Positions 9,652 through 29,563 are shown, counted from the first letter of the stretch. The stretch: 64,000 nucleotides of DNA from IMGVR_UViG_3300013116_000108:140101-204100; one strand, 5' to 3'. Numbers and translations are program-made. The notes: generated by a model from the sequence alone, not told the origin.

Positions 9652-12342
9652 TTAACCTTGCTGAGCAATATCCTGAATATGTCTATTACTTTTTCTATTA
9701 GATCCAAGTATAGCATTTAATTTAGAAACTGTTACATTGCCAATTTCTTTGTTATTTTCTAATTCATTTGTAGCAGTAGCAAGTAATTCACTTAAAAGTT
9801 TATTTGTTTTTTCAATACCTGCTGTAACTGACATAGATCCGCTTGTTGTTGCTAGTTCATCATTAGGTGTAATAGTTCCTCCAGTTGACGGTGTAAATAG
9901 TTCTGGCCCTCTTTCACCAACAATATAAGGATTGTCCATTCCTACAGAGCGAATGTTTCCGCCATACTGTTTAAATTGCTGTGGTTTAAACTGCCCATCA
10001 TAGGCATCAAAACTTGTATTAGCATTTAACCACGATACTATTTCGCCTGCTTTAATGTAACCTGGTGAATTTTCGCCATTCTTTCTATAAAAATCTATAG
10101 CCTCTTGTACATTACTTTGCTCTGCTTGGAATTGTCTCTTCCAATATGGCTTGTCTTTAGAACCTGCTTCTAAGTATTGAGCATATATCTCATCAAACAT
10201 CATTCCAAAGCCAGGGCCAAATCCGCCTAAGTTGTCATCACTGTCATGAGATGCTACTGTGGCACCTTTTGGTCCTTTAATTGACCATTGTTTTGCTTTT
10301 AGTTGGCCAAGATATGATTCAGCAGATTTAAGTAAGTCGCCATCTACTGATACATGTTTAGCCTCATTTACTAGAGCGGCAACTTCAGATGAAACTTGAG
10401 CGGCATCTTGTGTACCTAATTTTACGCCGCTACTTTTGGCTACTGCATCTGCTAGTTTAGATGGGTCAGCAATAAATTCAGCATTTTCTTCTGGAGATGA
10501 TTTGGCTATGATTGCCATAGCAGATTGTTTTTGGTTACCAGAGAATCCTGTACCTTCACCATCATTTTGTGCCGCGAGATCTGCCGCTACAACTAGGTTT
10601 TTCCTTCCTTCTGTCTCGTCGCCGTTTCCTATTTCTTCAAAAGCAATTTGATTCTTTAGTTGATTTGAAGCACCACCTAAAACATAATCTAGAGGATCAG
10701 CCGCAAAGTATTTTAATTCTTTAGATATTAACCCAAAGGATTTTGAGATATCTTCTCCTGCTTGTGTTACAGAATCAATCATGGTGTTGATTTTTTCTTG
10801 TATTGTTGGTTCTCCGTTTGCGCCGTCACCAAAGCCTTTGGCAAAATCCGCAACAGCGTCATTAATTGCTGATTTAAGTGAACCTGAAACTTCTGTTAAT
10901 GTAGCACCCATCATCAAGATCGCACCGCCGGCACCATCGGCTTTTTTGCTGTCGCTGGAACCAACTGCTTTGCCTAAATTATTAAATTGTGTTTGTAATT
11001 TTTGAACATCACTGGCCGCCTGTGTCATTACAGTAGCAACGTCACTAACACCATATAAGCCTTCAAACTCTTCACCACTTGCCGCAATACTTGGCAATAT
11101 GTCTCTTATACCTTCTTTGAATTCATCTTGGCTTATCTTTCCTGTTGCTACAGCGTCACCTAAGTCTCTTAATTTTTGTGCCGCATCGCTGTTACCAGCA
11201 ACAAAGTTTTTGATAGTCTGGTTACCAGCCGCCATCTCTAGTGCTAAATCTTTACCAGCAACACCCGCCATTAATACTTGAGATATTGCTGAATCTTGTC
11301 CTGCTGTACTAAAGACTAATTGTAAAGCCTTTTGAGCTTCAAGTGTAGCACCTTGTAATCTTATGTTAGCATCTGCTCTCAAATCATTTTGGGCCATTTC
11401 TTCTGCTAACTGTTGTCTACTTTTACCTGTTAGTCCTACTAGTGTGTTTAAGTCTGAAATGTATTCTTTATACAACTGAGTTTGTTGTCTGTACCCCATG
11501 TTTTGAAAATTAGTATTTCTTGATTGTGTTTGGGTATACTTTGCTAGTTGTTCTGCTTGTTCTTCATAAGACAGACCTAAAGCATATAATTCACCTCCTA
11601 CTGTATGATGAACTGTGTCTGCTAGTTCTACAAATCGTTTAGCACCTAGAGAAACACTACCACCAAAGGCCGCTAATCCTGAAGCATTTTGTTGGACAAT
11701 TTGTGTATAAGAATTCATTGTCAAACCCAACTGTTGTATTTGAGATGCTGTTCTAACAATGTCGCCGTTGTAGTTTGCTCCACTTTGACTTAATGCTATA
11801 AATCCATCATACATGTTTTGGGCATAGGCGGCAATCGCCATTGCGGCCGCTCCAGAGGCCGCTCCAAGTCCTGACAGAGCCGCTCCAACACCTGGTATCT
11901 TAGTTCCCATAACTTGGAAACTATCTGCTACTGCTCCTAACCCGTCACCTAGTGCTCCAGCACCTTGCTGTATAGCCCTACCTAACGTGTCAAAACTAGC
12001 AGGTCCTCTTATAAGATCATTAAGTACATTACCGGTATTTTTTACAATTTTACCTAAAGCACCAGCAACTGCTTTGCCTCGATCGGTCATTGTTTTATCG
12101 AGATCCTTCATCGTATCGTCGAAGTTACCCGACCAATCTTTCATACTAATGCTTAGATCTTTGTTTACTTTGGCTAGTTTTTTAATTTCGTCTTGTGTTT
12201 TTTTAGTTTCTGGATCAGATTTAGGCTTTGACCTTTGGCCATTCATTGTTTCAACAGCCTTTAATAGGTCTTTAAGAGTTTCTTCAGTTGCTACATCACT
12301 GACTATGATTTCGTTATCTTCTGTGTTAATTCTTATTGCCAT
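9652..12342 (-). CDS. Tail tape-measure-like protein (896 aa)
   Basis: Ala/Gly-rich and helical; C-terminal YIVGERGPELFTP motif typical of tape measures; divergent from the chaperone pair. Confidence 0.75.
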   Translation of the reverse strand: MAIRINTEDNEIIVSDVATEETLKDLLKAVETMNGQRSKPKSDPETKKTQDEIKKLAKVNKDLSISMKDWSGNFDDTMKDLDKTMTDRGKAVAGALGKIVKNTGNVLNDLIRGPASFDTLGRAIQQGAGALGDGLGAVADSFQVMGTKIPGVGAALSGLGAASGAAAMAIAAYAQNMYDGFIALSQSGANYNGDIVRTASQIQQLGLTMNSYTQIVQQNASGLAAFGGSVSLGAKRFVELADTVHHTVGGELYALGLSYEEQAEQLAKYTQTQSRNTNFQNMGYRQQTQLYKEYISDLNTLVGLTGKSRQQLAEEMAQNDLRADANIRLQGATLEAQKALQLVFSTAGQDSAISQVLMAGVAGKDLALEMAAGNQTIKNFVAGNSDAAQKLRDLGDAVATGKISQDEFKEGIRDILPSIAASGEEFEGLYGVSDVATVMTQAASDVQKLQTQFNNLGKAVGSSDSKKADGAGGAILMMGATLTEVSGSLKSAINDAVADFAKGFGDGANGEPTIQEKINTMIDSVTQAGEDISKSFGLISKELKYFAADPLDYVLGGASNQLKNQIAFEEIGNGDETEGRKNLVVAADLAAQNDGEGTGFSGNQKQSAMAIIAKSSPEENAEFIADPSKLADAVAKSSGVKLGTQDAAQVSSEVAALVNEAKHVSVDGDLLKSAESYLGQLKAKQWSIKGPKGATVASHDSDDNLGGFGPGFGMMFDEIYAQYLEAGSKDKPYWKRQFQAEQSNVQEAIDFYRKNGENSPGYIKAGEIVSWLNANTSFDAYDGQFKPQQFKQYGGNIRSVGMDNPYIVGERGPELFTPSTGGTITPNDELATTSGSMSVTAGIEKTNKLLSELLATATNELENNKEIGNVTVSKLNAILGSNRKSNRHIQDIAQQG

Positions 12343-12368
12343 ATTCTCATTTCACCATTATATACTCA

Positions 12369-12407
12369 TATAAATAGTTAGACTAACTACTATTATAATG
12401 TATTTAG
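12369..12407. promoter_or_regulatory. Face-to-face late promoters with a central palindrome
   Basis: TATAAATA (+, 12369-12376), CTAAATA (-, 12407-12401) and TAGTTAG-A-CTAACTA at 12375-12389. Confidence 0.55.
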
Positions 12408-12420
12408 CGGAGGAAAATCC

Positions 12421-13347
12421 ATGAGTGATAAAGAAACAAATCAAGACATGCCAAAAATGGCTACAGAGATTGAAACACCAGAAAAGGCAGTTAATCCTTT
12501 GCAGGCATATTTTCGCAGACCAGCAATTTATGTCCAACTGCCAAGTGGCGGTAAGTTCAACGAGCCGGGCGAACTTGAAATTCCCGTTAACGGAGAAATT
12601 CCAGTTTATCCGATGACAGCAAAAGATGAAATCTTAATGAGAACACCTGATGCTTTAATGAACGGTGCTACTACAGTTGAAGTTATCCAAAGTTGTTGTC
12701 CAAACATTAAAAATGCTTGGAAATTAAGTGCGTTAGATATTGACTTAATTCTTGTTAGTATTAGAATTGCGACATACGGCGAGTCTACTGAAATTAAAGG
12801 TGTTTGTCCAAAATGTAACGAAGAAAACAATTACGAGTTAGATTTAAGAACTATTACAGACAAAGTAACACAACGTGAGTATAAACCGTCAATTACAGTT
12901 AGCGATTTAAAAATACATTTTAAACCATTAACTTACGAAGCAGTTACTAAAGAAGCAATTAAAAACTTTGAACAGCAAAGAATGATTCAAGGCCTTGCTA
13001 CTGATGATACATTAGCAGAACAGGATCGAATTAATAGATTCCAAGATGCTTTTGTAAGATTAACTGTTTATTCGGTTGGGATACTAGCAGAAGCAGTAGG
13101 TCATATTGAAATGGCAGATGGTACTAAAATTTCTGATAGGCAACAAATTAGTGAATTTATAGCAAACTGTGATCGAACAATTTACAATACAATTAAGACA
13201 CACTTAGAAGAAAGTAAAACTAATTCAACTATAGAACCTATCCAATTTGAATGTGCCGGTACTACTGACACAGAAGGAAAACATACACCTTGCGGTGAGA
13301 AATGGCAACAACCATTTACTATTGATAATTCAACTTTTTTCGGATAA
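12421..13347 (+). CDS. Baseplate hub/tail assembly chaperone (gp26-like)
   Basis: Motifs VQLPSGGKF, PMTAKDEILM and DIDLILVSIRIATYG; CPKC and C..CG zinc motifs; ends ...STFFG. Confidence 0.75.
   Translation: MSDKETNQDMPKMATEIETPEKAVNPLQAYFRRPAIYVQLPSGGKFNEPGELEIPVNGEIPVYPMTAKDEILMRTPDALMNGATTVEVIQSCCPNIKNAWKLSALDIDLILVSIRIATYGESTEIKGVCPKCNEENNYELDLRTITDKVTQREYKPSITVSDLKIHFKPLTYEAVTKEAIKNFEQQRMIQGLATDDTLAEQDRINRFQDAFVRLTVYSVGILAEAVGHIEMADGTKISDRQQISEFIANCDRTIYNTIKTHLEESKTNSTIEPIQFECAGTTDTEGKHTPCGEKWQQPFTIDNSTFFG
13335..13341 (+). other. Putative -1 programmed ribosomal frameshift site (T TTT TTC)
   Basis: Canonical X XXY YYZ heptamer in the correct phase. The -1 frame is open from here into ORF 13353..13571 and is closed by TAA at 13326-13328 just upstream. 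Confidence 0.6.
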
Positions 13348-13352
13348 GGCTT

Positions 13353-13571
13353 TTGGCGTTAGATAATGAAAGCATTATCAAACTTCTCCAAGATTTTGAT
13401 AATGAGTCAAAAGCCCTACAAAAAGATTTATTGGAGACAACCTGGTATATGAGAGGAGGTATATCTTATAGCGAAGCCATGATGTTGTCACCAAATGAGC
13501 GTAAACAAATACACGATATAATTAAGCAAAATATTAAAAATACTGAAACTACTAAGTTACCTTTAATATAA
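13353..13571 (+). CDS. gp51-like chaperone segment; probably the C-terminal extension of a frameshift product
   Basis: WYMRGGISYSEAMMLSPNERK resembles tail-chaperone C-terminal segments; only a TTG start is available. Confidence 0.6.
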   Translation: MALDNESIIKLLQDFDNESKALQKDLLETTWYMRGGISYSEAMMLSPNERKQIHDIIKQNIKNTETTKLPLI

Positions 13572-13641
13572 ATTCACAATTTAAACATAGTTAAACCAAA
13601 TAACATATTTTAATATAAAGACTACCTGTTTAAATATTCTT

Positions 13642-13830
13642 ATGTACACTCACTATAATGTCATTAATGAACGTACACGCGACGTATACTGTACTGTCTT
13701 TTCTCCAGAAGAAGCACAGCAAGTAATAGACATGCAAAAAATTAATCACCCGCATGAAAGTTTTATAGTTAAAAAAATAAAAACTAGTTCTATAAAACCA
13801 GGCTTTGGGAGAGATCCAGATTTACATTAG
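13642..13830 (+). CDS. Small hypothetical protein (62 aa), probably leaderless
   Basis: TTAAATA-N5-ATG; plausible composition. Confidence 0.6.
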   Translation: MYTHYNVINERTRDVYCTVFSPEEAQQVIDMQKINHPHESFIVKKIKTSSIKPGFGRDPDLH

Positions 13831-13921
13831 GTCAGACACATACGATTTAACAGAAGACGGGTATTGGGAAATACATTTTGTAGATGATCCATGCGACGAT
13901 GTTTCGCATTGGTTTTTATAA
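13805..13921 (+). CDS. Possible 38 aa acidic micro-protein (TTG start)
   Basis: Hand translation MGEIQIYIRSDTYDLTEDGYWEIHFVDDPCDDVSHWFL*; overlaps the end of the previous ORF; weak SD. Confidence 0.3.
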   Translation: MGEIQIYIRSDTYDLTEDGYWEIHFVDDPCDDVSHWFL

Positions 13922-14370
13922 GTCAGAGTTTTCTGAAACATTAACAACATTAAAGAACAGTAATGTTATCAACTTCGTTGATAAGTTTTTTCGCTTTCGC
14001 TCAAAACATTTTTTAATTAGATATTAACGAAATAGTATTTCGTTATCATTCAGATATTTTATCCATACTTCGCCCGCTAGGGGCAAAGTAAGGTTGTCAT
14101 CATTCGAGTAACTCACCCATCATATCTAAGAAGATTTAGTATTACTACTAACGGAGGCGGCAACCCGCATACCCCCTACTTCAGCCTTCGCATTAGTCAC
14201 GGAACGTTATGTATATCGAGATATCCAACATACAAATCGCTGAGGTTGTGTCTGTTCTACAGAGCCTCATCTTTTAGCCTTGAAGTTAATTGGCCTTTAC
14301 TTGGTACAACCCAGATTCCGAACACGGGTGTCCGTGTCCTCAAGGGCATGTTTTCAGAGTACCTATATAG
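13922..14370 (-). ncRNA. Large structured non-coding element (ncRNA and/or replication origin)
   Basis: No long ORF. At least 7 hairpins; the 14066-14090 stem is perfect only on the minus strand (via G-U). Lies between convergent transcription units. Confidence 0.5.
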
Positions 14371-14371
14371 T

Positions 14372-14416
14372 TGTTAAAAGTGCTGTTAAAAGTGCTATTA
14401 AAAATGCTGTTAATAG
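14372..14416. repeat. 12 bp tandem direct repeat, ~3.7 copies
   Basis: TGTTAAAAGTGC / TGTTAAAAGTGC / TATTAAAAATGC / TGTTAATAG. Confidence 0.85.
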
Positions 14417-14425
14417 TATGTTATA

Positions 14426-14938
14426 CTAGGCACATAATGTTTTAACTAAATCTGAATTTCTTGTAAAAAATTCTTCAAAGTCTGATATGCGCCAGTTAGA
14501 GCCTGTAGTGTTTGACCAATAGTCGATGTAGTTTTTTGCTTTTGATTTGTGTCTAGATTCGATTGCGATAAATTTGCCTACTTGATTGAATTTCATTATT
14601 AATATATTGAAGTCGCCTGTTTCTGCTACATCCATTAGTTGTGATATCCACTCTTCTAACATTGGGATAGGTTCTGGTTGTAATAGTCTGTGAAATGGGA
14701 ATTGTTTATAAAACTTACATTCCGCATTAAGTTTAGGAAAACTTTGTCCGGGAACAATATCACCCTTAAAGGCTCTTACTTGCCCTTCATGAAGTATTTC
14801 CATTCTTGCTTTATTAGACCCGCCCACGTAAGCACCGGATCCTGGAGCTCTTATAAACGATTCACCGTATAGTCCGGACAAGAATTTTGCGACATCTCGT
14901 TCCCAACCTGATCCTTTTGCTTTTTGTGGGCTTGGCAT
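14426..14938 (-). CDS. Hjc-type PD-(D/E)XK Holliday junction resolvase
   Basis: Motifs KAKGSGWERDVAKFL, RAPGSGA, GDIVP and NAECKFY. Confidence 0.8.
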   Translation of the reverse strand: MPSPQKAKGSGWERDVAKFLSGLYGESFIRAPGSGAYVGGSNKARMEILHEGQVRAFKGDIVPGQSFPKLNAECKFYKQFPFHRLLQPEPIPMLEEWISQLMDVAETGDFNILIMKFNQVGKFIAIESRHKSKAKNYIDYWSNTTGSNWRISDFEEFFTRNSDLVKTLCA

Positions 14939-14976
14939 AAATTTAAATTATTCTTTCTTATAAGAAAGAACCCTAA

Positions 14977-15156
14977 TTACATAGCGTTCTTTTTTTCTTG
15001 TATTTCTGCTCTACGTGACTTACCTAGTTTTGCTAATTCACCTAGTGCCTTACGAGCTCTAGTTGCCGCCGCCTTGTTTCCTTTTTCGTCAAACTTTGCC
15101 GCTTCTTCTACATAAGACTCATATGCTTGTGTTATTTGTTCATGTAATGTTGACAT
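14977..15156 (-). CDS. Histone H1-like (Hc1-type) small DNA-binding protein, 59 aa
   Basis: KFDEKGNKAAATRARKALGELAKLGKSRRAEIQEKK. The true start is MSTLHEQ at 15156, after the SD AAGGAG. Confidence 0.75.
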   Translation of the reverse strand: MSTLHEQITQAYESYVEEAAKFDEKGNKAAATRARKALGELAKLGKSRRAEIQEKKNAM

Positions 15157-15216
15157 TACTATCTCCTTTATATAAAGGCTGTACATACAGCCATTGTTAT
15201 TTAATGTTATAGGTAC

Positions 15217-15780
15217 CTACGACAGCGATTTCTGAACTATTTCTTTAATCTCGTCCCACGAGTTGAAACAATCTAACTGAAATTGCCATCTACTATCAGG
15301 AGAATAATTAACGCCGTGGCGATGTCCACCAGCATTAATAAATGTTATTTTTGTATAATTGTGATCGTATAATAATTCGTCGTTTTCGTTATACCATTGA
15401 ATTCTCTGAGGAAATGATAATGGAATTATTAATCCAGCAGGCCTAAAATGGTCTTGATGTATATCAACTTGTGTAGCAGTTTCTTGAAAATTAGTTCTTA
15501 CTAGTTGGAATCCTGCCTGTCCACTACCGGGCATACTTTCATCTTTTTCAAAGTTAAATTTTAATCCAAATTTTTCAAAATACCTAACCCAATAATCTAC
15601 AATAGGTTCTTTTAAAATTGCTGGATTATAAACAACTTCTAACCCTAACGGTATACCGTGTTTACTATGATACATTTCAAATTCATTATCATACTTGTCG
15701 TACAAATACGAAAACTCATCTATGTTGTATCCTATAGGAGTTTCTATTACAAAATTATCTTTGGTTCGTTCAGTGTACAA
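15217..15780 (-). CDS. 2OG-Fe(II) oxygenase-like protein
   Basis: HxD (IHQD), a distal His (HRHGV) and an Arg (SRWQFQL) in a double-stranded beta-helix pattern. Confidence 0.6.
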   Translation of the reverse strand: MYTERTKDNFVIETPIGYNIDEFSYLYDKYDNEFEMYHSKHGIPLGLEVVYNPAILKEPIVDYWVRYFEKFGLKFNFEKDESMPGSGQAGFQLVRTNFQETATQVDIHQDHFRPAGLIIPLSFPQRIQWYNENDELLYDHNYTKITFINAGGHRHGVNYSPDSRWQFQLDCFNSWDEIKEIVQKSLS

Positions 15781-17603
15781 GTTAATGTCTGCCTTATTTT
15801 AAAGTTATCGCTGACTCTATCACTTCCTTCTAGAAGCATATGAGCAGTAGTTGATGTAGCGCCATTTAATGTTGGCGTAAATTCTATTGTTGTTTTTCTT
15901 CTTACATCATGTATAAAGTCATAGTTAAATGTTTTAGTAATTGGATATTCAACATCATAATCAAATAGTCTAGCATCGCAATACTTAATAAGTTCTGTTA
16001 AGATGTCTTTATCAATGCTGTATTGCTCGAGAAATGTTTTTGCTTCAGCATAAAACTCATCTCGTTTTTCTGTTAAGTTTTCTCTGTAGCCTAAACTTTG
16101 ACTTGCTAATCCAAATACATAATCGTCTATTCTTCCTTTTGCTTTATCAAAATGTTTTCTAATTAAACCGTTACTGTTAATAACATAATTGTACCAGTCG
16201 TTATAAAATTCTTTTTTAGATACAATATTTTCTCTATCTAAATAATCTGCGGCATCACGTAAAAAATTAAATTCGTGTCCTGTTCTTGTAGTCCATGTCC
16301 ATTCCCAGATATGTTTTAAGTCATCTTCCGATAGCCATTTTGTAGAAACTACAAGTTCAATATCTTCTTTTGTTTCTTCGTTTAGTACTCCAGGAAAAGG
16401 TTTACGAATAGTTTTAAATCCAAACTCTTCTCTACTTTTTCTGCTACCTAATTCAGCATTTGGTAATAATGCTAAAGGATATAGATATGTTGTTAATTCT
16501 TGATAATTTGTAATTTCTAAATATGTGTCTTTCCAACTATCTACTGTTTCTCCGGGATTACCTACAATAAGTTCACAGTCAAATGGCAAACCTAATTCAG
16601 CACAACGTTTAGCAAAATATTCATAATCGTTACTATCCATATTATCACGTTTTATAAGTTCTAATGCTAATGGTGTTAGTGTTTGTAAACTCATAATAAA
16701 ACTTTTAATAAGTCCGGCATCATACATTTTCTTTGCTATTTGTAAAATGTGTTCGTTGGCATTTTTTGCCCAGTTAACAAAGAATGTTTTAGGATAACCG
16801 TATTTCTTTTTTGTAGCGATAATCATATCAGCAATAGCATTATCTCTATCTTTTAAAATACCAAAGTTAGCATCAACACTATACAAGAATCCTATTTTAT
16901 TTTTACCCGCATATTCTATTTCTGCTTCTAATCTGTTAATGTCGTGATTAACTAGTTTACTATATGTAAGTCCTCCCCAATCACAAAATGAACAAGCATA
17001 AGGACATCCTCTGTTTGTTTCAAACAGCATAGCATGATGTGATTTTATCTTAGGCATTGAGCCTGACAAATAAGGACTTGGTAATTTACTTAAATCACGT
17101 TGTCTAGTTACTCTTTTATTATCTGCTACATTATTAGTCCAATGTGTTCCAAAGTTAACAGCAGTATTAGGTTGTGTGTCAATGTATTCTTTATTTGGAT
17201 TTAGTAATATGTTTTTAAATATTTCTTCTCCTTCTTGGAAAACAACAACGTCAACATACTTGTGACCGTTCCACCATTCATGTTTGCTGTCTTGCGGAAC
17301 TTGTGGACCACCGTAAATAATCATACACTCTGGCCAACGTTTTTTAATTTTTTCTGCTAGTTGGTTAGTAAAATTTTCATTCCAAATGTAAACACTAAAT
17401 CCAAATATAAAAGGATCTACTATTTCGTTTACTATTTCGTCAATGTCTTTCTTTTCATAATAAAGACCTGCTAATTGATAATTGTTTTTAACTTGTTCAT
17501 CTAATTCAGCATAAGTCCATAACCCGGCAACACTATACGGCAAGAATTTATGATTGCCAGGGTTAATAGTCATACTAAAGTTTGCTAGATAAACATTTTT
17601 CAT
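15747..17603 (-). CDS. Cobalamin-binding radical SAM enzyme (class B methyltransferase-like)
   Basis: N-terminal B12-binding pattern FGFSVYIWN...IYGGPQVP; radical SAM motif ETNRGCPYACSFCDWG; ELIVGNPGET. Confidence 0.9.
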   Translation of the reverse strand: MKNVYLANFSMTINPGNHKFLPYSVAGLWTYAELDEQVKNNYQLAGLYYEKKDIDEIVNEIVDPFIFGFSVYIWNENFTNQLAEKIKKRWPECMIIYGGPQVPQDSKHEWWNGHKYVDVVVFQEGEEIFKNILLNPNKEYIDTQPNTAVNFGTHWTNNVADNKRVTRQRDLSKLPSPYLSGSMPKIKSHHAMLFETNRGCPYACSFCDWGGLTYSKLVNHDINRLEAEIEYAGKNKIGFLYSVDANFGILKDRDNAIADMIIATKKKYGYPKTFFVNWAKNANEHILQIAKKMYDAGLIKSFIMSLQTLTPLALELIKRDNMDSNDYEYFAKRCAELGLPFDCELIVGNPGETVDSWKDTYLEITNYQELTTYLYPLALLPNAELGSRKSREEFGFKTIRKPFPGVLNEETKEDIELVVSTKWLSEDDLKHIWEWTWTTRTGHEFNFLRDAADYLDRENIVSKKEFYNDWYNYVINSNGLIRKHFDKAKGRIDDYVFGLASQSLGYRENLTEKRDEFYAEAKTFLEQYSIDKDILTELIKYCDARLFDYDVEYPITKTFNYDFIHDVRRKTTIEFTPTLNGATSTTAHMLLEGSDRVSDNFKIRQTLTCTLNEPKIIL

Positions 17604-18229
17604 TTTGCCTTAAATATCCTCAGGGAATGATAGTGTTGATGTGTTGTAACTAAACTAGGCCAAGGTCCAATACATTCCACCTCAGTTAAAAATTGTTGTT
17701 TGTTCCAACCGGATTCTTCCATGTAATTATAGTCTTCCATATTTGGTGTTGTTATAACTAATATACCATCTTCATTTAAGCATTTAGAAATATTTTCGGC
17801 AGGTGCTGAACTTAAATGTCCTTTTGTAAACAATCCACTTGCTAATATAATATCGTATTTCTTAGGCAATGGTTGTTTTACAATATCAATAATACTGACA
17901 TTTCTATAATGCTCTTCTGCTTTTTTTATAAACTGTTCAGTTAGATCATATCCGTCTACATTAGAATACCCAGCCTGCCATAGTATTTCTCCACCGGGGC
18001 CTGGTCCACAACCTAAATCAGCAATCTCAATTTCCCATTGCTTTGGGTAGTTTTTTATTACATAATCAGTTGTTTTAACTGGTCCCAACCAGCCTGCTTC
18101 TTCGCATATATCTTTGGTGTACGTTTCCCAATGTTCATAAAGTTTTCTTTGTTCTTGTTTGTTGTCAAATCCATTATTGTAACTGTCGCCTAAATTTTTA
18201 TTGAGATTGCTCATTATTTTTTTATCCAA
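17600..18229 (-). CDS. Class I SAM-dependent methyltransferase (METTL27/WBSCR27-like)
   Basis: Motifs IADLGCGPG, VDGYDL and YDIILASGLFTKGHL. Confidence 0.85.
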   Translation of the reverse strand: MDKKIMSNLNKNLGDSYNNGFDNKQEQRKLYEHWETYTKDICEEAGWLGPVKTTDYVIKNYPKQWEIEIADLGCGPGPGGEILWQAGYSNVDGYDLTEQFIKKAEEHYRNVSIIDIVKQPLPKKYDIILASGLFTKGHLSSAPAENISKCLNEDGILVITTPNMEDYNYMEESGWNKQQFLTEVECIGPWPSLVTTHQHYHSLRIFKAK

Positions 18230-19626
18230 TCTGGGTTATCAATTAGTGTGTTATGTATATTTACTCTACTTACTTTAGGAATACACGTTGCTTGGCGTAA
18301 TATTGCGACTGTGCTTACTAAACTTGTGTATTTTACAGGCTGTTTAAATGGTTGCATTTTATCTTTACACCATTCTTGTAATTCTTGAGGAGAAACATCA
18401 CCATTGTATATACAAGCCGGTACAAAGTGTAATTTTTCGTCAGGTTGTGGATAAACATAAACCTCTTTAACACCTGGGTGTTGTGAAATAATATGCTCAA
18501 TTTCAAATGGATATACTTTACCGCCACCTCTTACAATTATAAGTTCATTTGATCTTCCTTTTAATATCCAGTTACCTTCTTCGTTTATTTCAGCAATATC
18601 TCCTGTGTCCCACCAATCACCGTCCGGTGTCATAGGACCTCTAAATTCAATAGTGCTATTTTCTGTTGACAGTCTGTATTCAGCACCGGCATTTACAAGA
18701 CACTCAATTGGCTTGCCTATTGTATCAAAATTGTTACTATAATTAACAAGTGTCATGCCTGTTGCGGCATCACCATATCCACATATCCAATTACTATGGC
18801 CAAAGAACTTTTCAAATTCTTCTTTTTGCCCATCAATAAGTGCGGCACCACTATACTCAAATACTTCGATACTGTGTCCACCGTTGTCACCTTTGTCAAT
18901 TACTTTTTGCCATGCTAGTGGAAAGCCTGCTAACCAAGTAGGTTTAACCCATTTAGCCGCCTCGGCATATTCTTCTTGCTCGTATATAAGATGGCAATGC
19001 CCACCTTTTGCTATTGTTGTAAATGTAACTTCTTGTCCCCAGCCAATGTAAGGACCCATAGAATTAATTGTTCTGTTTGTTTCTGGACTACGATACCATT
19101 TGTTTCCACGTTCACGATAATAATGTGTAACGTCTTGACTTGTGCCATAGTTGTTTTCATCTAGCTCGTAAGGTACAGGATAACTTTTAGTCCAGCCGTA
19201 TGGATGACTAGTTCCACTACTATAATAAAGCATTATTTCTTTGTCAAGAACTGTACTTTTTTCATAATGTAAATGTTCTAAATCAACAGTACCATCTAAG
19301 TTAACATAAACAATAGCATTAGATTTGTTAGCATCTAATCTAAATTTCCAGTCACCCTCTTCACCGTTCTTATATGCTTGTTTTAAATCTTCACCCCATG
19401 GTAAAGTTGTCGCACACATATCTAAAGCCGCGGCAAATAGATACAAATATGTATGAACAGAGTTAATACCTACTACGCTTATTCTGTGACCAGCATGGTA
19501 TCCTTGTTCTTTGTACCAAGCATTAATCTTGTGTATCTCTTTAATAAATTCGTTGTATGTTAATTTTGTATTTTTATCACTCAGAGCTATATTCTCCGAT
19601 GGTACTAATAAGTGATACGGCCTCAT
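18214..19626 (-). CDS. AMP-binding (ANL superfamily) adenylate-forming ligase
   Basis: A3-like YYSSGTS..TKS, A5-like GYG, A7/A8 WWDTGDI...GRSNELII..GGKVYPFEIE, and a C-terminal Lys. Confidence 0.85.
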   Translation of the reverse strand: MRPYHLLVPSENIALSDKNTKLTYNEFIKEIHKINAWYKEQGYHAGHRISVVGINSVHTYLYLFAAALDMCATTLPWGEDLKQAYKNGEEGDWKFRLDANKSNAIVYVNLDGTVDLEHLHYEKSTVLDKEIMLYYSSGTSHPYGWTKSYPVPYELDENNYGTSQDVTHYYRERGNKWYRSPETNRTINSMGPYIGWGQEVTFTTIAKGGHCHLIYEQEEYAEAAKWVKPTWLAGFPLAWQKVIDKGDNGGHSIEVFEYSGAALIDGQKEEFEKFFGHSNWICGYGDAATGMTLVNYSNNFDTIGKPIECLVNAGAEYRLSTENSTIEFRGPMTPDGDWWDTGDIAEINEEGNWILKGRSNELIIVRGGGKVYPFEIEHIISQHPGVKEVYVYPQPDEKLHFVPACIYNGDVSPQELQEWCKDKMQPFKQPVKYTSLVSTVAILRQATCIPKVSRVNIHNTLIDNPDWIKK

Positions 19627-19636
19627 CTATGCTCCT

Positions 19637-21400
19637 TTAATTGATTTTAACGTCGTTGTTGTAACTGGTAAATCCGTTTTCTTTAGTTACTGTTAGAACA
19701 TTATTTACCCTACCCGCTAATTCATCTCTATGAGAAATAAGCCAAATAGATTTGTGGCGTTCTCTAGAAATCTTTTTAAGGACTGCTAGAGAACTTTCCA
19801 CACCTGAGGTGTCCATGCCTGAGTCAACTAACTCGTCGATGAATAACAAGTTTATAGGTTGGTATAAGTTTTCCCAAACATCACGGAATGACCAACTCAA
19901 TGCTAGAATTAATCTATTCCTTTCACCTCTGGACAAGTTATCAAAGTCAAGATCACGTCCTAATTCTGTAATCTCGATTGATAAATCATTTTGAAAAACT
20001 ACTTTATGAGGTAGTCCAATTTTGTCAAGATAATATGTTAAACGTTTATTTAAAAATGCTAAGTTTTGTTCAATAATACGTTTACGAACAAAACTATCTT
20101 TACTTGTTAATAATTTGTATAAAAACTCTTGATGTTCTTTTTTGAAATTTAAATCTTCTAATAGTTCAAATGATACTTCTTGGATTCCTGTTTCTTCCAT
20201 TTCAGTTATTTGTTCATTATAAGTGTTTTCTTCTGCTTGTTTATTTGTTAACTGATTTTCTAAAGTAGTTAACGTACTCTTATGATTGTGTGCTTCAGTT
20301 AAGTCAGAATAAAATGTTTCTGGCTTATCGCCAACGGGTTCTCTTAATGCTATATTATCTGTTACTTTTAATCCAGCATCAACTATTTCCTGTGCTATAT
20401 CCTCAACTTGCTTTTCGAGACTTGTTAATTTTTCTTCATATTCCTTTAAGTGTTTAATATCTTGGCCACAACTATCGCATGTATGATTTTTAACATGTTC
20501 TAAACTAGCAACAAGTTTGTCAGACTCCTTAACTAGTCTTTCTAGTTGTCGTTCGCTACTTGCTATGTCTGTTTCTACATCTTTTTGTTGCCTTTTGCGG
20601 TCTCTAAAGTCGTTTAACAGTTTGTGTTGTTCAAGTTCTTTGTCTATATCAACGTCACCTAAATCAATAATTGCTTTTTCTAATTTTTGTATTTGCTCAT
20701 CTTTATTATCCTCCCACATCTTACTTCGACGTTTGAGGTTTTCTATTTGTTCTTTAATATGTTCGTTTGCTTTTTCGACACCTTGTATTCTAAATTCTTC
20801 TTCTTTAGCCCGGTCTCGATTAACTTTCATTTCTTCTCTAAGTCGTTCTGCTTTTTCACTTAGTAAAGTAATACCCAACAGTTGCTCAATAATAGCACGT
20901 TGGTCATTATTTTTTAAACTTAAAAAAGGTTCTGTGTAAGTGTTAAGCGCCACAACATGTTTGAACATCTCGTGACCCATTTCAAGTAATCGATTTATTT
21001 CGTGTTGTGTTTCTCTGCTATCACCTTGAGCATTATCATCTGCTTCTTGTTCTTGATTATCTACATAAAATTTTAATAAGTTAGGCTTACGTCCACGTTC
21101 AATTTTATACTTTTTTCCCTTCTTTTCAAACTCTAAACAAACAAGCATATTCTTGCCATTTGTTTTATTAATTAAATTATCAGCCCTAATTTTAGTAAGT
21201 GCTTGTCCATACAAGGCATAACTTAAAGCATTAATAATTGTAGTTTTACCAGTACCGTTTCTAGCACCTGTGTCGTCTCCACCTAAGTCGAGGTTTTCGC
21301 CTAATACTAATGTTAAATCCTCTCTGTTAAAATCAATCGCTTGTGTGCTGTTACCCACACTCATAAAATTCTTGACTGTGATACTATTCAAATTAAACAT
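19637..21400 (-). CDS. g46: Recombination nuclease ATPase subunit (gp46/SbcC/Rad50)
   Basis: Walker A NGTGKTT, Zn-hook CDSCG, signature LSRGE and Walker B LLFIDE. Confidence 0.95.
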   Translation of the reverse strand: MFNLNSITVKNFMSVGNSTQAIDFNREDLTLVLGENLDLGGDDTGARNGTGKTTIINALSYALYGQALTKIRADNLINKTNGKNMLVCLEFEKKGKKYKIERGRKPNLLKFYVDNQEQEADDNAQGDSRETQHEINRLLEMGHEMFKHVVALNTYTEPFLSLKNNDQRAIIEQLLGITLLSEKAERLREEMKVNRDRAKEEEFRIQGVEKANEHIKEQIENLKRRSKMWEDNKDEQIQKLEKAIIDLGDVDIDKELEQHKLLNDFRDRKRQQKDVETDIASSERQLERLVKESDKLVASLEHVKNHTCDSCGQDIKHLKEYEEKLTSLEKQVEDIAQEIVDAGLKVTDNIALREPVGDKPETFYSDLTEAHNHKSTLTTLENQLTNKQAEENTYNEQITEMEETGIQEVSFELLEDLNFKKEHQEFLYKLLTSKDSFVRKRIIEQNLAFLNKRLTYYLDKIGLPHKVVFQNDLSIEITELGRDLDFDNLSRGERNRLILALSWSFRDVWENLYQPINLLFIDELVDSGMDTSGVESSLAVLKKISRERHKSIWLISHRDELAGRVNNVLTVTKENGFTSYNNDVKIN

Positions 21401-22416
21401 TAAAGATTCCTGTAAATTTCCGTTAAGAGATTTTTATCATAAAAATCTGTTTCGACTGCTTCGAGTTGACTGTATACAATACTGTCTACAGATTCAAAAT
21501 TAATTTCAACTGTTTCATCTACTTGAGTGTCTTCTAATTTTTGTTGTATTAAACTTAGTTCTCGTATGGGATATTTTTCCATAAAGTTTTCTCGTATGAA
21601 ATTTGCTTCTTCGTAACTAATTTCAATATCAAGCATAACCCTAGCATACGTTTTAGGTAATAGATACTTGTCTGGATCGTCAAGCAGTTGTCCTAGTTTT
21701 AGTGTTTTGTACTTAGGAGCATCAGGCCATGCTATATACTCAGGCTGTCCTCCCCACTCTAGTATCATTACACCTCTATCATCATCCCAAGCATCTGAAT
21801 AATTATGTGGGAAAGCGTTACCAATATATGTAATGTTTCCTCTTGTTTGTCGTTTGTGAAAGTGACCACTAAAAGCATGTTCTACTCCGCCAAAATCGTC
21901 GTCGTGTAGTTCGCCTATGTCGGGCATTTGTACCATAGCATTCATATAGAAATGAGGCAACTCTAAATGCCCAAACATATATTTGGCTTTAATTTTACTA
22001 ATACCCTTGTGTTCATCGCCTACTAACCAAGGTACAATAGCAACGTTACCGTCAACAGTAACATCATTGTAAATTTTAATATTGGGATAATTTTTAATCC
22101 ATGCTATAGAATTAAAGTCACGTTTATCACGATAGTATTCATCATGATTACCCGGAATGAATACAATTTTTTCAAATGCTTTGCTTAAAGCATCAATGGC
22201 TTTAATACTATAGTTAAGTGTAGCAACATTAATTGCCGCTCTATGATGATGCCAGTCGCCAAGAAATAAGCAAGTGTCACATTCTTGTTCTTTACCTTGT
22301 TTGATCACCCATTCAACAAACTCTAAACAATCGTCATTAAACAATGTAGAATTAGACTTGTTACCAAAGTGAATGTCTGTAAAGGCTATCGCCTTTTTAA
22401 ATAAATTATCTGCCAT
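21400..22416 (-). CDS. g47: Recombination nuclease subunit (gp47/SbcD/Mre11)
   Basis: Metallophosphoesterase motifs DIHFG, LGDWHH, GNHD and GHFH. Confidence 0.95.
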   Translation of the reverse strand: MADNLFKKAIAFTDIHFGNKSNSTLFNDDCLEFVEWVIKQGKEQECDTCLFLGDWHHHRAAINVATLNYSIKAIDALSKAFEKIVFIPGNHDEYYRDKRDFNSIAWIKNYPNIKIYNDVTVDGNVAIVPWLVGDEHKGISKIKAKYMFGHLELPHFYMNAMVQMPDIGELHDDDFGGVEHAFSGHFHKRQTRGNITYIGNAFPHNYSDAWDDDRGVMILEWGGQPEYIAWPDAPKYKTLKLGQLLDDPDKYLLPKTYARVMLDIEISYEEANFIRENFMEKYPIRELSLIQQKLEDTQVDETVEINFESVDSIVYSQLEAVETDFYDKNLLTEIYRNL

Positions 22417-22436: not shown

Positions 22437-22465
22437 ATTATTACACAAAGTAAATGCTTTGTCAA
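22437..22465 (-). promoter_or_regulatory. Sigma70-type promoter for the g47-g46-biosynthetic cluster operon
   Basis: TTGACA-17-(TG-T)AATAAT; the -35 element overlaps the g55 stop codon. Confidence 0.55.
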
Positions 22466-28441: not shown

Positions 28442-29563
28442 ATGGCGAAGGTAACTAGGGTAGGAGTTGACTCGCATCTTGGACACGCTTCACCTACTCC
28501 AAATCCATATCATGTAACACCGTATGCTACGGGTTCTAGTGACGTTATAACAAATGATCAAAATACTGTAAGAGTAGGAGACGTAACGGCTTGTGGCGAT
28601 CCTGCTGTTGGAAGTAGTTCATCAGTTTTTATAAACGGTCGCGGAGTACATAGGCAAGGAGACATTACAGGAGGACACGGCAGTTGGATACCTAATGCTT
28701 CTGCTAGTGGAAGTGATACTGTATTTGCCGGTGACTATGCTACTGAAGATTTAGGAGACGATACTATTGTATATCGTTTACCGCCTTTAGAAACACCCGA
28801 GCCTGTTGAGGGCGAACCAGATTCTATATACATGAAAAGTCATACACCTGGCGGCGGTGCTTTACCTCCTAGAGTAGATGGTGGTCCTGTTGTTGCGGCA
28901 GGTAATTCCGATCAAGCAACAGAAAATTTTGAACCAGGACCTCCAGGAGATTGTACAAGAAAAGACATTGGATCAGTTTCGTCTAAGTATGAATCAAATG
29001 GTAATGCTAGTGCTATAGGGCACGACTCAACAGGTGGATGGAGTTGGGGAGCATATCAAATTGCTACTAAAGTAGGAACATTTAAAAACTATATGAACTT
29101 TTTAAACAAACGATACAATGCCATTTATAATGAGTTAGAGAGTGTAGGCGGAAACTCAGCATTTACACAGGGTACAGATTCAGCAAAAGCAAAGTGGAAA
29201 GAACTTAAATCAAATCCAGACTTCTTACAAAGTCAACATGACTTTATCCAAGTAACACACTACGATAAACTTGTAGCAAAAATTAAATCACAAACAGGCT
29301 TAGATATCTGTGATGGCACACATTGTAATGGTTTACAAGATGCTATATGGAGTATATCTGTACAACACGGCCCAGGTTCTAGTATACCTAAAAAAGGAAT
29401 TACAGCCGCCGGCGAAGGTGCTACTGATGTACAATTAATTAATGCTATCTATGATGAACGTGATAACGTAAACAAATATTTTGCTTCTTCAACCGCGGCT
29501 GTTAAGTCGTCTGTTGCTAATAGATTTGCTCAAGAAAGAGCAGACTGCTTGTCTATTTGCTAG
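28442..29563 (+). CDS. PAAR (gp5.4-like) spike tip fused to a lysozyme-like domain
   Basis: N-terminal VTRVG.DSHLGH...VRVGD.TACGD...VFINGRGVHRQGD; Pro-rich linker; C-terminal SSKYES...DSTGGWSWGAYQI...WSISVQHG. Confidence 0.8.
   Translation: MAKVTRVGVDSHLGHASPTPNPYHVTPYATGSSDVITNDQNTVRVGDVTACGDPAVGSSSSVFINGRGVHRQGDITGGHGSWIPNASASGSDTVFAGDYATEDLGDDTIVYRLPPLETPEPVEGEPDSIYMKSHTPGGGALPPRVDGGPVVAAGNSDQATENFEPGPPGDCTRKDIGSVSSKYESNGNASAIGHDSTGGWSWGAYQIATKVGTFKNYMNFLNKRYNAIYNELESVGGNSAFTQGTDSAKAKWKELKSNPDFLQSQHDFIQVTHYDKLVAKIKSQTGLDICDGTHCNGLQDAIWSISVQHGPGSSIPKKGITAAGEGATDVQLINAIYDERDNVNKYFASSTAAVKSSVANRFAQERADCLSIC

What the first reader, a model, noticed from the sequence alone, without database searches (positions are those of the whole stretch)
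15217..19626. Four-enzyme biosynthetic-type cluster appended to the g47-g46 operon
Overlapping, coupled genes encode an ANL adenylating ligase, a SAM methyltransferase, a B12-dependent radical SAM enzyme and a 2OG-Fe(II) oxygenase. That is activate, methylate, C-methylate and hydroxylate chemistry, like a small natural-product or hypermodification pathway. No carrier protein or condensation domain is in the window. Possible products include a modified lipid or acyl group, a signal or anti-defence metabolite, or a nucleotide/glycan decoration. ANL ligases paired with B12 radical SAM enzymes are, to my knowledge, unusual in lytic phages. The product is unknown.
Basis: partly seen in the sequence, partly recalled or inferred. 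Interest (0 to 1): 0.7.

Follow-up and report, generated by a model that had tools for sequence, protein, structure and literature searches.

The report
Phage cassette with B12 radical methylase
A marine jumbo phage carries four coupled enzyme genes (acid-activating ligase, methyltransferase, vitamin-B12 radical methylase, iron/2-oxoglutarate oxygenase) that travel together as a phage-only unit and probably decorate a small acid, though the product is unknown.

Summary
Window 15217-19626 (minus strand) carries four translationally coupled genes:
- an ANL adenylating enzyme;
- a class I SAM methyltransferase, whose true start is the ATG at 18214;
- a cobalamin-dependent radical SAM methylase, closest to the sequential C-methylases TokK and CysS;
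- a 187-aa protein with no Pfam hit. A confident model and an invariant HxD...H...R signature show it is a 2OG/Fe(II) oxygenase.

The genes are not independent morons.
- Every radical SAM relative at 41% identity or more, on a contig long enough to tell, has the same ANL and oxygenase beside it. Most also have the methyltransferase.
- Gene order varies. One lineage fuses the methylase and methyltransferase. Others duplicate the ANL or the methylase.
- The cassette sits in at least three genomic neighbourhoods, so its link to g46-g47 is lineage-specific.
- No cellular genome searched carries it.

The composition mirrors cystobactamid PABA tailoring: oxygenase, then O-methyltransferase, then CysS acting on a pantetheinyl thioester. 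My best reading is acid activation, hydroxylation, methylation and radical methyl extension of a small molecule. Substrate and product remain unknown.

The genome has an ACP-like gene outside the window, but its pantetheine-attachment serine is replaced by aspartate. B12 radical SAM relatives are common in phages; the pairing with this ANL is not.

The parts
22437..22465 (-). sigma-70-like promoter consensus (TTGACA-17-AATAAT, TG-extended) upstream of gp47; a possible start of the transcription unit
   Evidence: This is a consensus match only: the region as a whole has 55 such sites against 44 expected from shuffles.
21400..22416 (-). gp47 / SbcD-Mre11-like nuclease subunit (upstream neighbour, not part of the cassette)
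   Evidence: Pfam Metallophos and PHROG 100, E 3.6e-68.
19637..21400 (-). gp46 / SbcC-Rad50-like subunit (upstream neighbour). Its stop lies 10 nt before the ANL start.
   Evidence: PHROG 77, E 8e-95. 49% identical to Pseudomonas jumbo phage PA5oct. Junction sequence.
18214..19626 (-). ANL-superfamily adenylating enzyme, 470 aa, of a divergent phage-only clade
   Evidence: Pfam AMP-binding and AMP-binding_C above cut-off. D343, R358 and K451 (motifs A7, A8, A10) are invariant in 12 homologues, but the P-loop is atypical. 13 relatives at 59% identity or more, then a gap to 27-36% local matches to generic ligases.
17600..18214 (-). Class I SAM-dependent methyltransferase, 204 aa from the ATG at 18214, which overlaps the ANL stop as TAATG
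   Evidence: Pfam Methyltransf_31/23/11/25. GCGPG motif I. Model pLDDT 83, with TehB-like, O-MT and N-MT fold matches. Found fused to the radical SAM enzyme in P0014.
15747..17603 (-). Cobalamin-dependent (class B) radical SAM methylase, 618 aa, TokK/ThnK/CysS-like
   Evidence: CX3CX2C at C200/C204/C207. Profile against PDB: TokK 5.8e-94, CysS 1.6e-65. W74 and W209 match TokK Trp76 and Trp215. KedN5-family HMM scores 270 bits, cut-off 700.
15217..15780 (-). Small 2OG/Fe(II) oxygenase, 187 aa, TTG start, overlapping the radical SAM gene by 34 nt
   Evidence: Invariant H108-x-D110...H155-x8-R164. AlphaFold pLDDT 88. Foldseek matches PHD2, P4H and AlkB with probability 1.0 and TM about 0.55. The family has only 14 clusters among 1.84 billion representatives.
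15177..15192 (-). Short GC hairpin followed by a T-rich tail, 25 nt after the oxygenase stop; a possible end of the unit
   Evidence: This is a pattern match only.

Best explanation
The four genes form one co-functional, mobile, phage-specific tailoring cassette that acts on a carboxylic acid of low molecular weight.

Proposed chain of steps:
1. The ANL enzyme adenylates the acid and passes it to a thiol. This is most likely the pantetheine arm of CoA or of a host carrier protein. The phage's own ACP-like protein lacks the attachment serine.
2. The small 2OG/Fe(II) oxygenase installs a hydroxyl group.
3. The SAM methyltransferase methylates a heteroatom.
4. The cobalamin radical SAM enzyme adds one or more methyl groups to an unactivated sp3 carbon, as its closest characterised relatives TokK, ThnK and CysS do. 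The result would be an ethyl, isopropyl or alkoxy-type branched group.

What is shown:
- the identity of the four enzymes;
- their coupling;
- their co-inheritance;
- the fusion of two of them;
- the restriction of the cassette to viral contigs.

What is inferred:
- thioester formation;
- the order of steps;
- the number of methylations;
- the substrate, and what the product does for the phage.

The pathway needs cobalamin, SAM, 2-oxoglutarate, O2 and Fe-S assembly from the infected cell.
For: Enzyme identities.

Translational coupling.

Co-occurrence:
- In 17 loci holding a radical SAM relative at 41-100% identity, the ANL and the oxygenase are present wherever the contig reaches far enough.
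- One variant, L010, carries a different ANL (25% identical) and only a distant oxygenase-like ORF (18% identical).
- The methyltransferase is present in most.
- Relatives at 38% identity or less lack all three partners.

Gene order and copy number change while the set is kept:
- ANL-MT-rSAM-oxygenase;
- MT-ANL-rSAM-oxygenase (L017, L019);
- ANL-rSAM-rSAM-oxygenase (L012);
- two ANLs in tandem (L023);
- no adjacent MT (L007).

Fusion: P0014 is the radical SAM enzyme (54% identical) joined to the methyltransferase (33% identical, E 1e-29).

Mobility: the cassette lies in different neighbourhoods.

Phylogeny: the cassette enzymes form one clade with 100% local support inside a viral clade, separate from all cellular relatives.

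Precedent: cystobactamid PABA tailoring uses an oxygenase (CysC), a SAM O-methyltransferase (CysF) and CysS on a pantetheinylated substrate (PMC12846815). TokK and ThnK also act on a pantetheinylated substrate, and their two signature tryptophans are kept in the phage enzyme.

ANL competence: catalytic D343, R358 and K451 are invariant.
Against: - No substrate is identified, and none of the chemistry has been tested.
- The ANL P-loop is atypical and its lysine is not conserved across the family. CoA-ligase, carrier-loading and amide-forming activities cannot be told apart.
- The methyltransferase is missing next to the cassette in L007 and L012, so methylation by it is not obligatory.
- The methyltransferase fold does not say whether it methylates O, N or C.
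- The radical SAM C-terminal third, which binds pantetheine in TokK, does not align with TokK or CysS.
- W209 is Leu in 6 of 25 family members.
- The nearest non-cassette relatives sit in sugar-type or unknown tailoring islands.
- The oxygenase's nearest folds are protein prolyl hydroxylases and AlkB.
- No PPTase, condensation or ketosynthase gene lies in the 204 kb held. That is only about 56% of the genome.
Confidence: 0.5

Rival explanations
1. The cassette decorates a sugar or glycan, for example a sugar acid of a surface polysaccharide or a glycan on the virion, rather than a free small acid. The ANL would activate a sugar carboxylate, and the radical SAM enzyme would C-methylate the sugar.
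For: The wider viral family of this radical SAM enzyme (at least 595 IMG/VR contigs) sits beside NAD-dependent sugar epimerase/dehydratases, DegT-type aminotransferases, carbamoyltransferases, UDP-glucose dehydrogenase, sulfotransferase-like genes and SPASM radical SAM genes. The cassette clade is nested among these.
Against: None of the cassette loci has a sugar-nucleotide gene next to the cassette. The closest characterised enzymes (TokK, CysS, the KedN5 family) act on non-sugar substrates.
Confidence: 0.15
2. The cassette modifies a protein or peptide, either a virion or host protein or a RiPP-like peptide, by hydroxylation and C-methylation of side chains.
For: The oxygenase's best structural matches are the prolyl hydroxylases PHD2 and P4H. 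Cobalamin radical SAM enzymes that methylate peptides and proteins exist (PoyC, Mmp10; cited). In this phage the cassette lies between structural and late genes.
Against: The radical SAM enzyme scores far better against the TokK, CysS and KedN5 models than against the RiPP C-methyltransferase model (2.5e-80 against 3e-11). No conserved short precursor ORF travels with the cassette. An ANL has no obvious role in such a pathway. The location next to structural genes is not conserved.
Confidence: 0.12
3. The cassette makes a hypermodified DNA or RNA base or nucleotide, as an anti-restriction decoration.
For: Neighbours are DNA-metabolism genes: gp46/gp47 here, and nrdAB, thyA and DHFR in other lineages. 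The oxygenase also resembles AlkB.
Against: The neighbourhood changes between lineages. No kinase, glycosylase, base transferase or nucleotide-binding partner travels with the cassette. ANL enzymes need a carboxylate. No known phage base-modification pathway that I know of uses this enzyme set (from memory, not tested).
Confidence: 0.1
4. The four genes are independent auxiliary genes (morons) that happen to be adjacent and share no substrate.
For: Each belongs to a large, promiscuous superfamily. The methyltransferase is absent from some versions.
Against: The set co-occurs across 41-100% identity with changed order and changed neighbourhoods. Two of the genes occur fused. The gene overlaps are conserved. 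The oxygenase family is found almost only with the cassette.
Confidence: 0.03

Closest known systems
Cystobactamid PABA tailoring set CysC (oxygenase), CysF (SAM O-methyltransferase) and CysS (cobalamin radical SAM), acting on a pantetheinyl thioester
   Same: Same enzyme classes in one pathway: oxygenase, SAM methyltransferase, and a cobalamin radical SAM of the same sequence node (CysS E 1.6e-65 with the family profile), with both signature tryptophans kept. A thioester-forming step is plausibly supplied here by the ANL.
   Different: Here the oxygenase is a minimal 2OG/Fe(II) enzyme. I did not check what type CysC is. There is no NRPS assembly line, no functional carrier protein and no condensation domain in the DNA held. 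The host is a phage. The substrate is unknown. Local identity to CysS is low, and the match covers only residues 22-476.
TokK / ThnK carbapenam C6 sequential methylases
   Same: These are the best solved-structure matches (TokK 5.8e-94 over residues 18-477). They share the CX3CX2C motif, the N-terminal cobalamin domain and the equivalents of Trp76 and Trp215.
   Different: No carbapenem genes are present. The C-terminal domain, which holds the pantetheine tail in TokK, does not align. The phage enzymes form their own viral clade.
NCBIfam NF033712, KedN5-family methylcobalamin-dependent radical SAM C-methyltransferase (kedarcidin naphthoate tailoring)
   Same: It is the best family-model match (E 2.5e-80). 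From memory, the kedarcidin naphthoate set also combines a CoA ligase, an O-methyltransferase, hydroxylases and this methylase. I could not confirm this in the papers held.
   Different: The score of 270 bits is far below the family cut-off of 700, so the phage enzyme is not a member.
Viral B12 radical SAM genes in sugar-type tailoring islands of marine and other phages
   Same: Same viral clade of the enzyme, at 26-38% identity, and very common (at least 595 IMG/VR contigs).
   Different: Those lack the ANL, this methyltransferase and this oxygenase. They sit instead with epimerases, aminotransferases, carbamoyltransferases and SPASM enzymes.

Membership tests
ANL superfamily (class I adenylate-forming enzymes) | N-terminal AMP-binding domain plus the small C-terminal domain | tested here: met
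   PF00501 scores 36.1 bits (cut-off 29.9) and PF13193 scores 36.4 bits (cut-off 24.5).
ANL superfamily (class I adenylate-forming enzymes) | Catalytic motifs A7 (Asp), A8 (Arg at the hinge) and A10 (Lys) | tested here: met
   D343, R358 and K451 are invariant in 12 family members. Assigning these residues to the motifs is my own reading of the sequence.
ANL superfamily (class I adenylate-forming enzymes) | Canonical A3 P-loop (Ser/Thr/Gly-rich loop ending in Pro-Lys-Gly) | tested here: inconclusive
   The loop starts canonically (SSGT) but is longer than usual, and its Lys is replaced in L012 and L017.
ANL superfamily (class I adenylate-forming enzymes) | Second half-reaction (thioester with CoA or a carrier, versus an amide) | not testable with these tools
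   It needs an enzyme assay.
Cobalamin-dependent (class B) radical SAM methylases, TokK/ThnK/CysS node | CX3CX2C cluster motif in a radical SAM core | tested here: met
   C200, C204 and C207 are invariant in 25 sequences. PF04055 scores 37.5 bits.
Cobalamin-dependent (class B) radical SAM methylases, TokK/ThnK/CysS node | N-terminal cobalamin-binding Rossmann domain | tested here: met
   PF02310 scores 31.5 bits as a protein, just under the 32.1 cut-off, and 35.1 bits in the genome scan. The region aligns with the TokK N-terminal domain.
Cobalamin-dependent (class B) radical SAM methylases, TokK/ThnK/CysS node | The two tryptophans (TokK Trp76 and Trp215) reported as shared only by TokK, ThnK and CysS | tested here: met
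   W74 is kept in 24 of 25 sequences and W209 in 19 of 25. Both are present in the window's protein.
Cobalamin-dependent (class B) radical SAM methylases, TokK/ThnK/CysS node | Sequential methyl transfer to an sp3 carbon of a pantetheinylated substrate | not testable with these tools
   It needs anaerobic reconstitution.
NCBIfam KedN5 family (NF033712) | Score above the curated cut-off of 700 bits | tested here: not met
   270.4 bits.
2OG/Fe(II)-dependent oxygenases | HxD/E...H iron-binding triad, plus a basic residue for the 2OG C5 carboxylate | tested here: met
   H108, D110, H155 and R164 are invariant in 17 sequences. The roles are assigned by analogy.
2OG/Fe(II)-dependent oxygenases | Double-stranded beta-helix fold | tested here: met
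   The model has pLDDT 88. Foldseek matches PHD2, P4H and AlkB with probability 1.0 and TM 0.5-0.58.
2OG/Fe(II)-dependent oxygenases | Match to a curated sequence family model | tested here: not met
   No Pfam, NCBIfam or PHROG hit. It is a new small sequence family.
Class I SAM-dependent methyltransferases | Rossmann-like fold with glycine-rich motif I | tested here: met
   Four Pfam methyltransferase models score above their cut-offs. D66 plus G70/G72 are invariant. Fold match to 3cgg at E 9e-10.
Class I SAM-dependent methyltransferases | Acceptor atom (O, N, C or S) | tested here: inconclusive
   O-methyltransferases (DnrK, MfnG, StiE) and N-methyltransferases (NTMT1, ToxA, GSMT) match about equally well.
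Carrier-protein-dependent (NRPS/PKS-type) biosynthetic cluster | Functional acyl or peptidyl carrier protein with the pantetheine-attachment serine | tested here: not met
   The only PP-binding match in the 204 kb (genome 127264-127479) reads Asp-Asp-Phe where Asp-Ser-Leu is expected. The ACP-like protein on the L003 contig shows the same change.
Carrier-protein-dependent (NRPS/PKS-type) biosynthetic cluster | Condensation or ketosynthase domain, and a PPTase | tested here: not met
   No PF00668, PF00109 or PF01648 match in the 204 kb held, which is about 56% of the genome.

The most novel reading that the evidence does not exclude
Marine jumbo phages carry their own self-contained, virus-exclusive natural-product-style pathway. 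Its core is a TokK/CysS-type sequential cobalamin methylase that builds a branched alkyl or alkoxy group on a thioester-activated acid during infection. The product would be a virus-made specialised metabolite or a remodelled host metabolite, such as a signal, an inhibitor or a counter-defence molecule. This would also make the phage's fitness depend on host vitamin B12.
Probability: 0.3. Interest if true: 0.8.

Novelty: new variant of a known kind. Interest (0 to 1): 0.62.

Why it matters
- Sequential cobalamin radical SAM methylases are known from a few antibiotic pathways of actinomycetes and myxobacteria.
- Here a distinct clade of them is fixed in a three- to four-gene cassette. In the collections searched, that cassette occurs only on viral or unassigned metagenomic contigs and moves between sites in marine jumbo phage genomes.
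- If the cassette makes a small molecule, it would be a rare case of a phage-encoded tailoring pathway for a specialised metabolite.
- It would also tie phage infection to the marine B12 economy.
- It offers enzymologists a compact, naturally varied set (fusion, duplications, versions without the methyltransferase) for studying what controls the number of methylations.
- The much larger viral family of related methylases, on at least 595 contigs, appears to be largely uncharted.

Tried and rejected
- **Nucleotide search.** The cassette against 50,697 phage records gave no match. A protein search with the radical SAM enzyme gave one weak hit, 24% identity. No deposited phage is therefore available for annotation transfer.
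- **Family scans of the 187-aa ORF.** Pfam, NCBIfam and PHROGs found nothing. The structure prediction resolved it.
- **Phage ACP-like protein as the carrier.** I rejected this as a canonical carrier because the attachment serine is Asp. A complex prediction of the ANL with this protein returned no verdict, which counts neither for nor against binding.
- **ACP co-occurrence in relatives.** Four of the five relatives' contigs are only 11-17% complete, so this could not be judged. ACP-like genes occur sporadically in unrelated phages.
- **Cellular source.** A scan of 185,579 species genomes found only relatives at 26-38% identity, none with the partner genes.
- **Neighbouring backbone genes.** A 170-180-aa protein, a 227-248-aa 'short AMP-binding' protein and a 211-254-aa protein flank the cassette in four lineages. 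In this genome they lie 140 kb away, so I did not count them as cassette members. A functional link is not excluded.
- **Literature.** Four searches found no description of this cassette.
- **Expression.** No RNA run holds the window's sequence. Four seawater metatranscriptomes hold short contigs of relatives (about 85-97% identical) on the radical SAM, ANL and oxygenase genes. DNA carry-over cannot be excluded.
- **Protein atlas look-up of the ANL.** It gave only generic ANL clusters.
- **Promoter and terminator scans.** These are consensus matches close to shuffle expectation.

Full report
**What the window is**

The window is the last 64 kb of a 204.1 kb IMG/VR virus record, which CheckV judges to be about 56% complete. 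It encodes T4-type core genes:
- major head protein, portal, baseplate hub and wedge;
- a late sigma factor;
- gp46 and gp47.

Its gp46 is closest (49%) to the Pseudomonas jumbo phage PA5oct, followed by Atu_ph07 and Phosso. The phage is therefore a roughly 350 kb jumbo myovirus. Near-identical DNA occurs in marine and seawater metagenomes from at least ten studies.

**The observation**

Four minus-strand ORFs fill 15217-19626.

*ANL (18214-19626)*
- It passes both Pfam ANL models.
- The A7 Asp, A8 Arg and A10 Lys are invariant across 12 homologues.
- The P-loop is unusually long, and its lysine is not conserved.

*Methyltransferase*
- It is a class I SAM enzyme.
- The junction sequence and the homologue alignments place its start at the ATG at 18214, overlapping the ANL stop as TAATG.

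*Radical SAM protein (15747-17603)*
- It has the CX3CX2C motif and an N-terminal B12-binding domain.
- Its best curated model is the KedN5 family, but at 270 bits against a cut-off of 700.
- Its only strong solved relatives are TokK and CysS: 1.3e-65 and 5e-50 with the single sequence, 5.8e-94 and 1.6e-65 with a family profile.
- The TokK paper reports that Trp76 and Trp215 are shared by TokK, ThnK and CysS but not by other cobalamin methylases.
- The phage enzyme has tryptophan at both positions, W74 and W209. They are kept in 24 and 19 of 25 family members.

*The 187-aa ORF*
- It has no hit in any family library.
- Its family is tiny: 14 clusters in 1.84 billion representatives.
- The alignment shows an invariant H-x-D...H-x8-R signature.
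- The model is confident, at pLDDT 88.
- Its fold neighbours are PHD2, bacterial P4H, AlkB and PKHD-type hydroxylases.

*Coupling*
- The genes are coupled by TAATG and ATGA overlaps.
- A 34-nt overlap between the radical SAM and oxygenase genes is conserved in relatives.
- An AGGAG lies 5 nt before the ANL start, just after the gp46 stop.
- A sigma-70-like site precedes gp47 and a hairpin follows the oxygenase. These are pattern matches only.

**Do the genes belong together?**

Yes.

*Relatives with the cassette*
- A protein search with the radical SAM enzyme found a graded series of relatives.
- Scans of viral contigs gave loci at 100, 92, 79, 53, 43 and 41% identity.
- Every relative at 41% identity or more, on a contig that extends far enough, has the same ANL clade and the same small oxygenase beside it. 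Most also have the methyltransferase.
- One variant, L010, has a different ANL (25% identical) and only a distant oxygenase-like ORF.

*Relatives without it*
- Relatives at 38% identity or less, viral or cellular, have none of the three partners.

*Order and copy number change while the set persists*
- The methyltransferase lies before the ANL in L017 and L019.
- The radical SAM gene is duplicated in tandem in L012.
- The ANL is duplicated in tandem in L023.
- No methyltransferase is adjacent in L007.

*Fusion*
- In P0014 and P0015 the radical SAM enzyme (54% identical) is fused at its C-terminus to the methyltransferase (33% identical, E 1e-29).

*Neighbourhood*
- The flanks differ between lineages.
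- gp46/gp47 and the Hc1-like gene flank the cassette only here and in L002 and L003.
- In L004, L017, L019 and L022 it lies a few kb from nrdAB.
- In L007 it lies beside thyA and DHFR.

*ANL clade*
- The ANL has 13 relatives at 59% identity or more, then a gap to local matches of 27-36% with generic ligases.

*Tree*
- On a FastTree of 241 sequences, the cassette enzymes form one clade with 100% local support.
- That clade lies inside a viral group and is separate from all cellular relatives.
- The tree is quick and has several long branches, so I rely only on this coarse result.

*Cellular genomes*
- A scan of 185,579 species genomes found nothing closer than 26-38% identity, and none with the partner genes.

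**What it most likely does**

The characterised relatives give a concrete template.
- In cystobactamid biosynthesis, PABA is hydroxylated by the oxygenase CysC.
- It is then O-methylated by the SAM enzyme CysF.
- CysS extends the methoxy carbon to ethoxy, isopropoxy or butoxy, acting on a pantetheinylated thioester (PMC12846815).
- TokK and ThnK likewise methylate a pantetheinylated carbapenam two or three times.

The phage cassette has one enzyme of each needed class, plus an ANL that could make the thioester. I therefore favour this sequence:
1. acid activation;
2. hydroxylation;
3. heteroatom methylation;
4. radical methyl extension on a small molecule.

Only the enzyme classes and their linkage are shown. 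The order of steps, the acceptor thiol, the number of methylations and the substrate are inferred.

Some versions lack the methyltransferase and some have two methylases. This suggests that the radical methylation is the core of the pathway and that the SAM methyltransferase can be dispensed with.

**The carrier question**

- There is one PP-binding match in the 204 kb, at genome 127264-127479, directly upstream of the gp15 tail-sheath stabiliser gene.
- Its attachment site reads Asp-Asp-Phe where Asp-Ser-Leu is expected, so it cannot carry pantetheine in the usual way.
- An ACP-like gene on the L003 contig shows the same substitution. It lies next to an IscU-like gene and a gene with a radical SAM-type cysteine motif.
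- No PPTase, condensation or ketosynthase domain was found.
- CoA or a host carrier is thus the likeliest acceptor, if a thioester is made at all.

**Rivals**

*Glycan reading*
- It rests on the wider viral family of this methylase, which is common (at least 595 IMG/VR contigs).
- That family sits with sugar epimerases, aminotransferases, carbamoyltransferases and SPASM enzymes.
- The cassette loci themselves lack such genes.

*Protein-modification reading*
- It rests on the oxygenase's prolyl-hydroxylase-like fold.

*Nucleic-acid reading*
- It rests on the DNA-metabolism neighbours and the AlkB likeness.
- Both are weak arguments, because the neighbourhood is not conserved.

*Independent morons*
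- This reading is close to excluded.

**Expression**

No RNA run holds this sequence. Short contigs of relatives, about 85-97% identical, map on the radical SAM, ANL and oxygenase genes in four seawater metatranscriptomes. This is weak evidence, because DNA carry-over is possible.

**Verdict**

This is a real, conserved, mobile cassette found only in phages. Its enzyme families are known, but the combination is new and the product is unknown. It is a new variant of a known kind of system (a tailoring gene cluster around a sequential cobalamin methylase) and is worth an experimental follow-up.

Noticed in passing
outside the window: genome G000 127264-127479 (+), = L001:1495-1710: A 71-aa ACP-like gene lies directly upstream of the gp15 tail-sheath stabiliser gene. 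Its phosphopantetheine-attachment serine is replaced by Asp (it reads DDF, not DSL). An ACP-like gene on the related contig (L174:1465-1704, minus strand) has the same change. That gene sits next to an IscU-like gene and a 470-aa ORF with a radical SAM-type cysteine motif (not family-checked).
   Followed up: partly
window 14977-15186 (-), likely start at 15154: A small Hc1-type histone H1-like protein (PF07432, E 1.6e-14) lies just downstream of the cassette. This family is known from Chlamydia, so it is unusual in a phage. A PDDEXK_15 endonuclease gene follows at 14426-14938.
   Followed up: no
window 36299-49327 (+): A single 4342-aa ORF sits within the baseplate and tail module, after a 1175-aa baseplate wedge gene. 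It is presumably a giant fibre or structural protein.
   Followed up: no
window 28442-29563 (+): A 373-aa protein with an N-terminal PAAR motif follows the baseplate hub/lysozyme-like gene.
   Followed up: no
outside the window: genome G000 12061-18485 (= L092): A CobS-like AAA protein (369 aa) and a DUF2201/VWA-type protein homologue (432 aa; by homology to the L007 gene) lie near a 236-aa 'short AMP-binding' protein and two unknown genes. In four other lineages those last three genes directly flank the cassette. This region may be the cassette's ancestral site or a functional partner.
   Followed up: partly
loci L014-L016 and L020-L091 (IMG/VR and metagenome contigs): At least 595 viral contigs encode a B12 radical SAM enzyme of the same viral clade (26-38% identity). 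They sit in islands with sugar epimerases, DegT aminotransferases, carbamoyltransferases, sulfotransferase-like genes and SPASM radical SAM genes. This appears to be a large, uncharacterised phage tailoring system.
   Followed up: partly
L010:1038-7425 (7.5 kb metagenome contig): This variant has the methylase-methyltransferase fusion, two copies of a distant oxygenase-like ORF, a different ANL (25% identical), a nitroreductase and an OpuAC-type betaine-binding protein. A nitroreductase also lies near the cassette in L007. Whether this contig is viral or cellular is unknown.
   Followed up: no
window 31098-32309 (-); genome G000 67459-68547 and 74914-75942: The same phage carries three further radical SAM genes, one with a SPASM domain. 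It also has an Asp/Asn-hydroxylase-family gene at genome 83767-84216. The phage is unusually rich in Fe-S and oxygenase enzymes.
   Followed up: no
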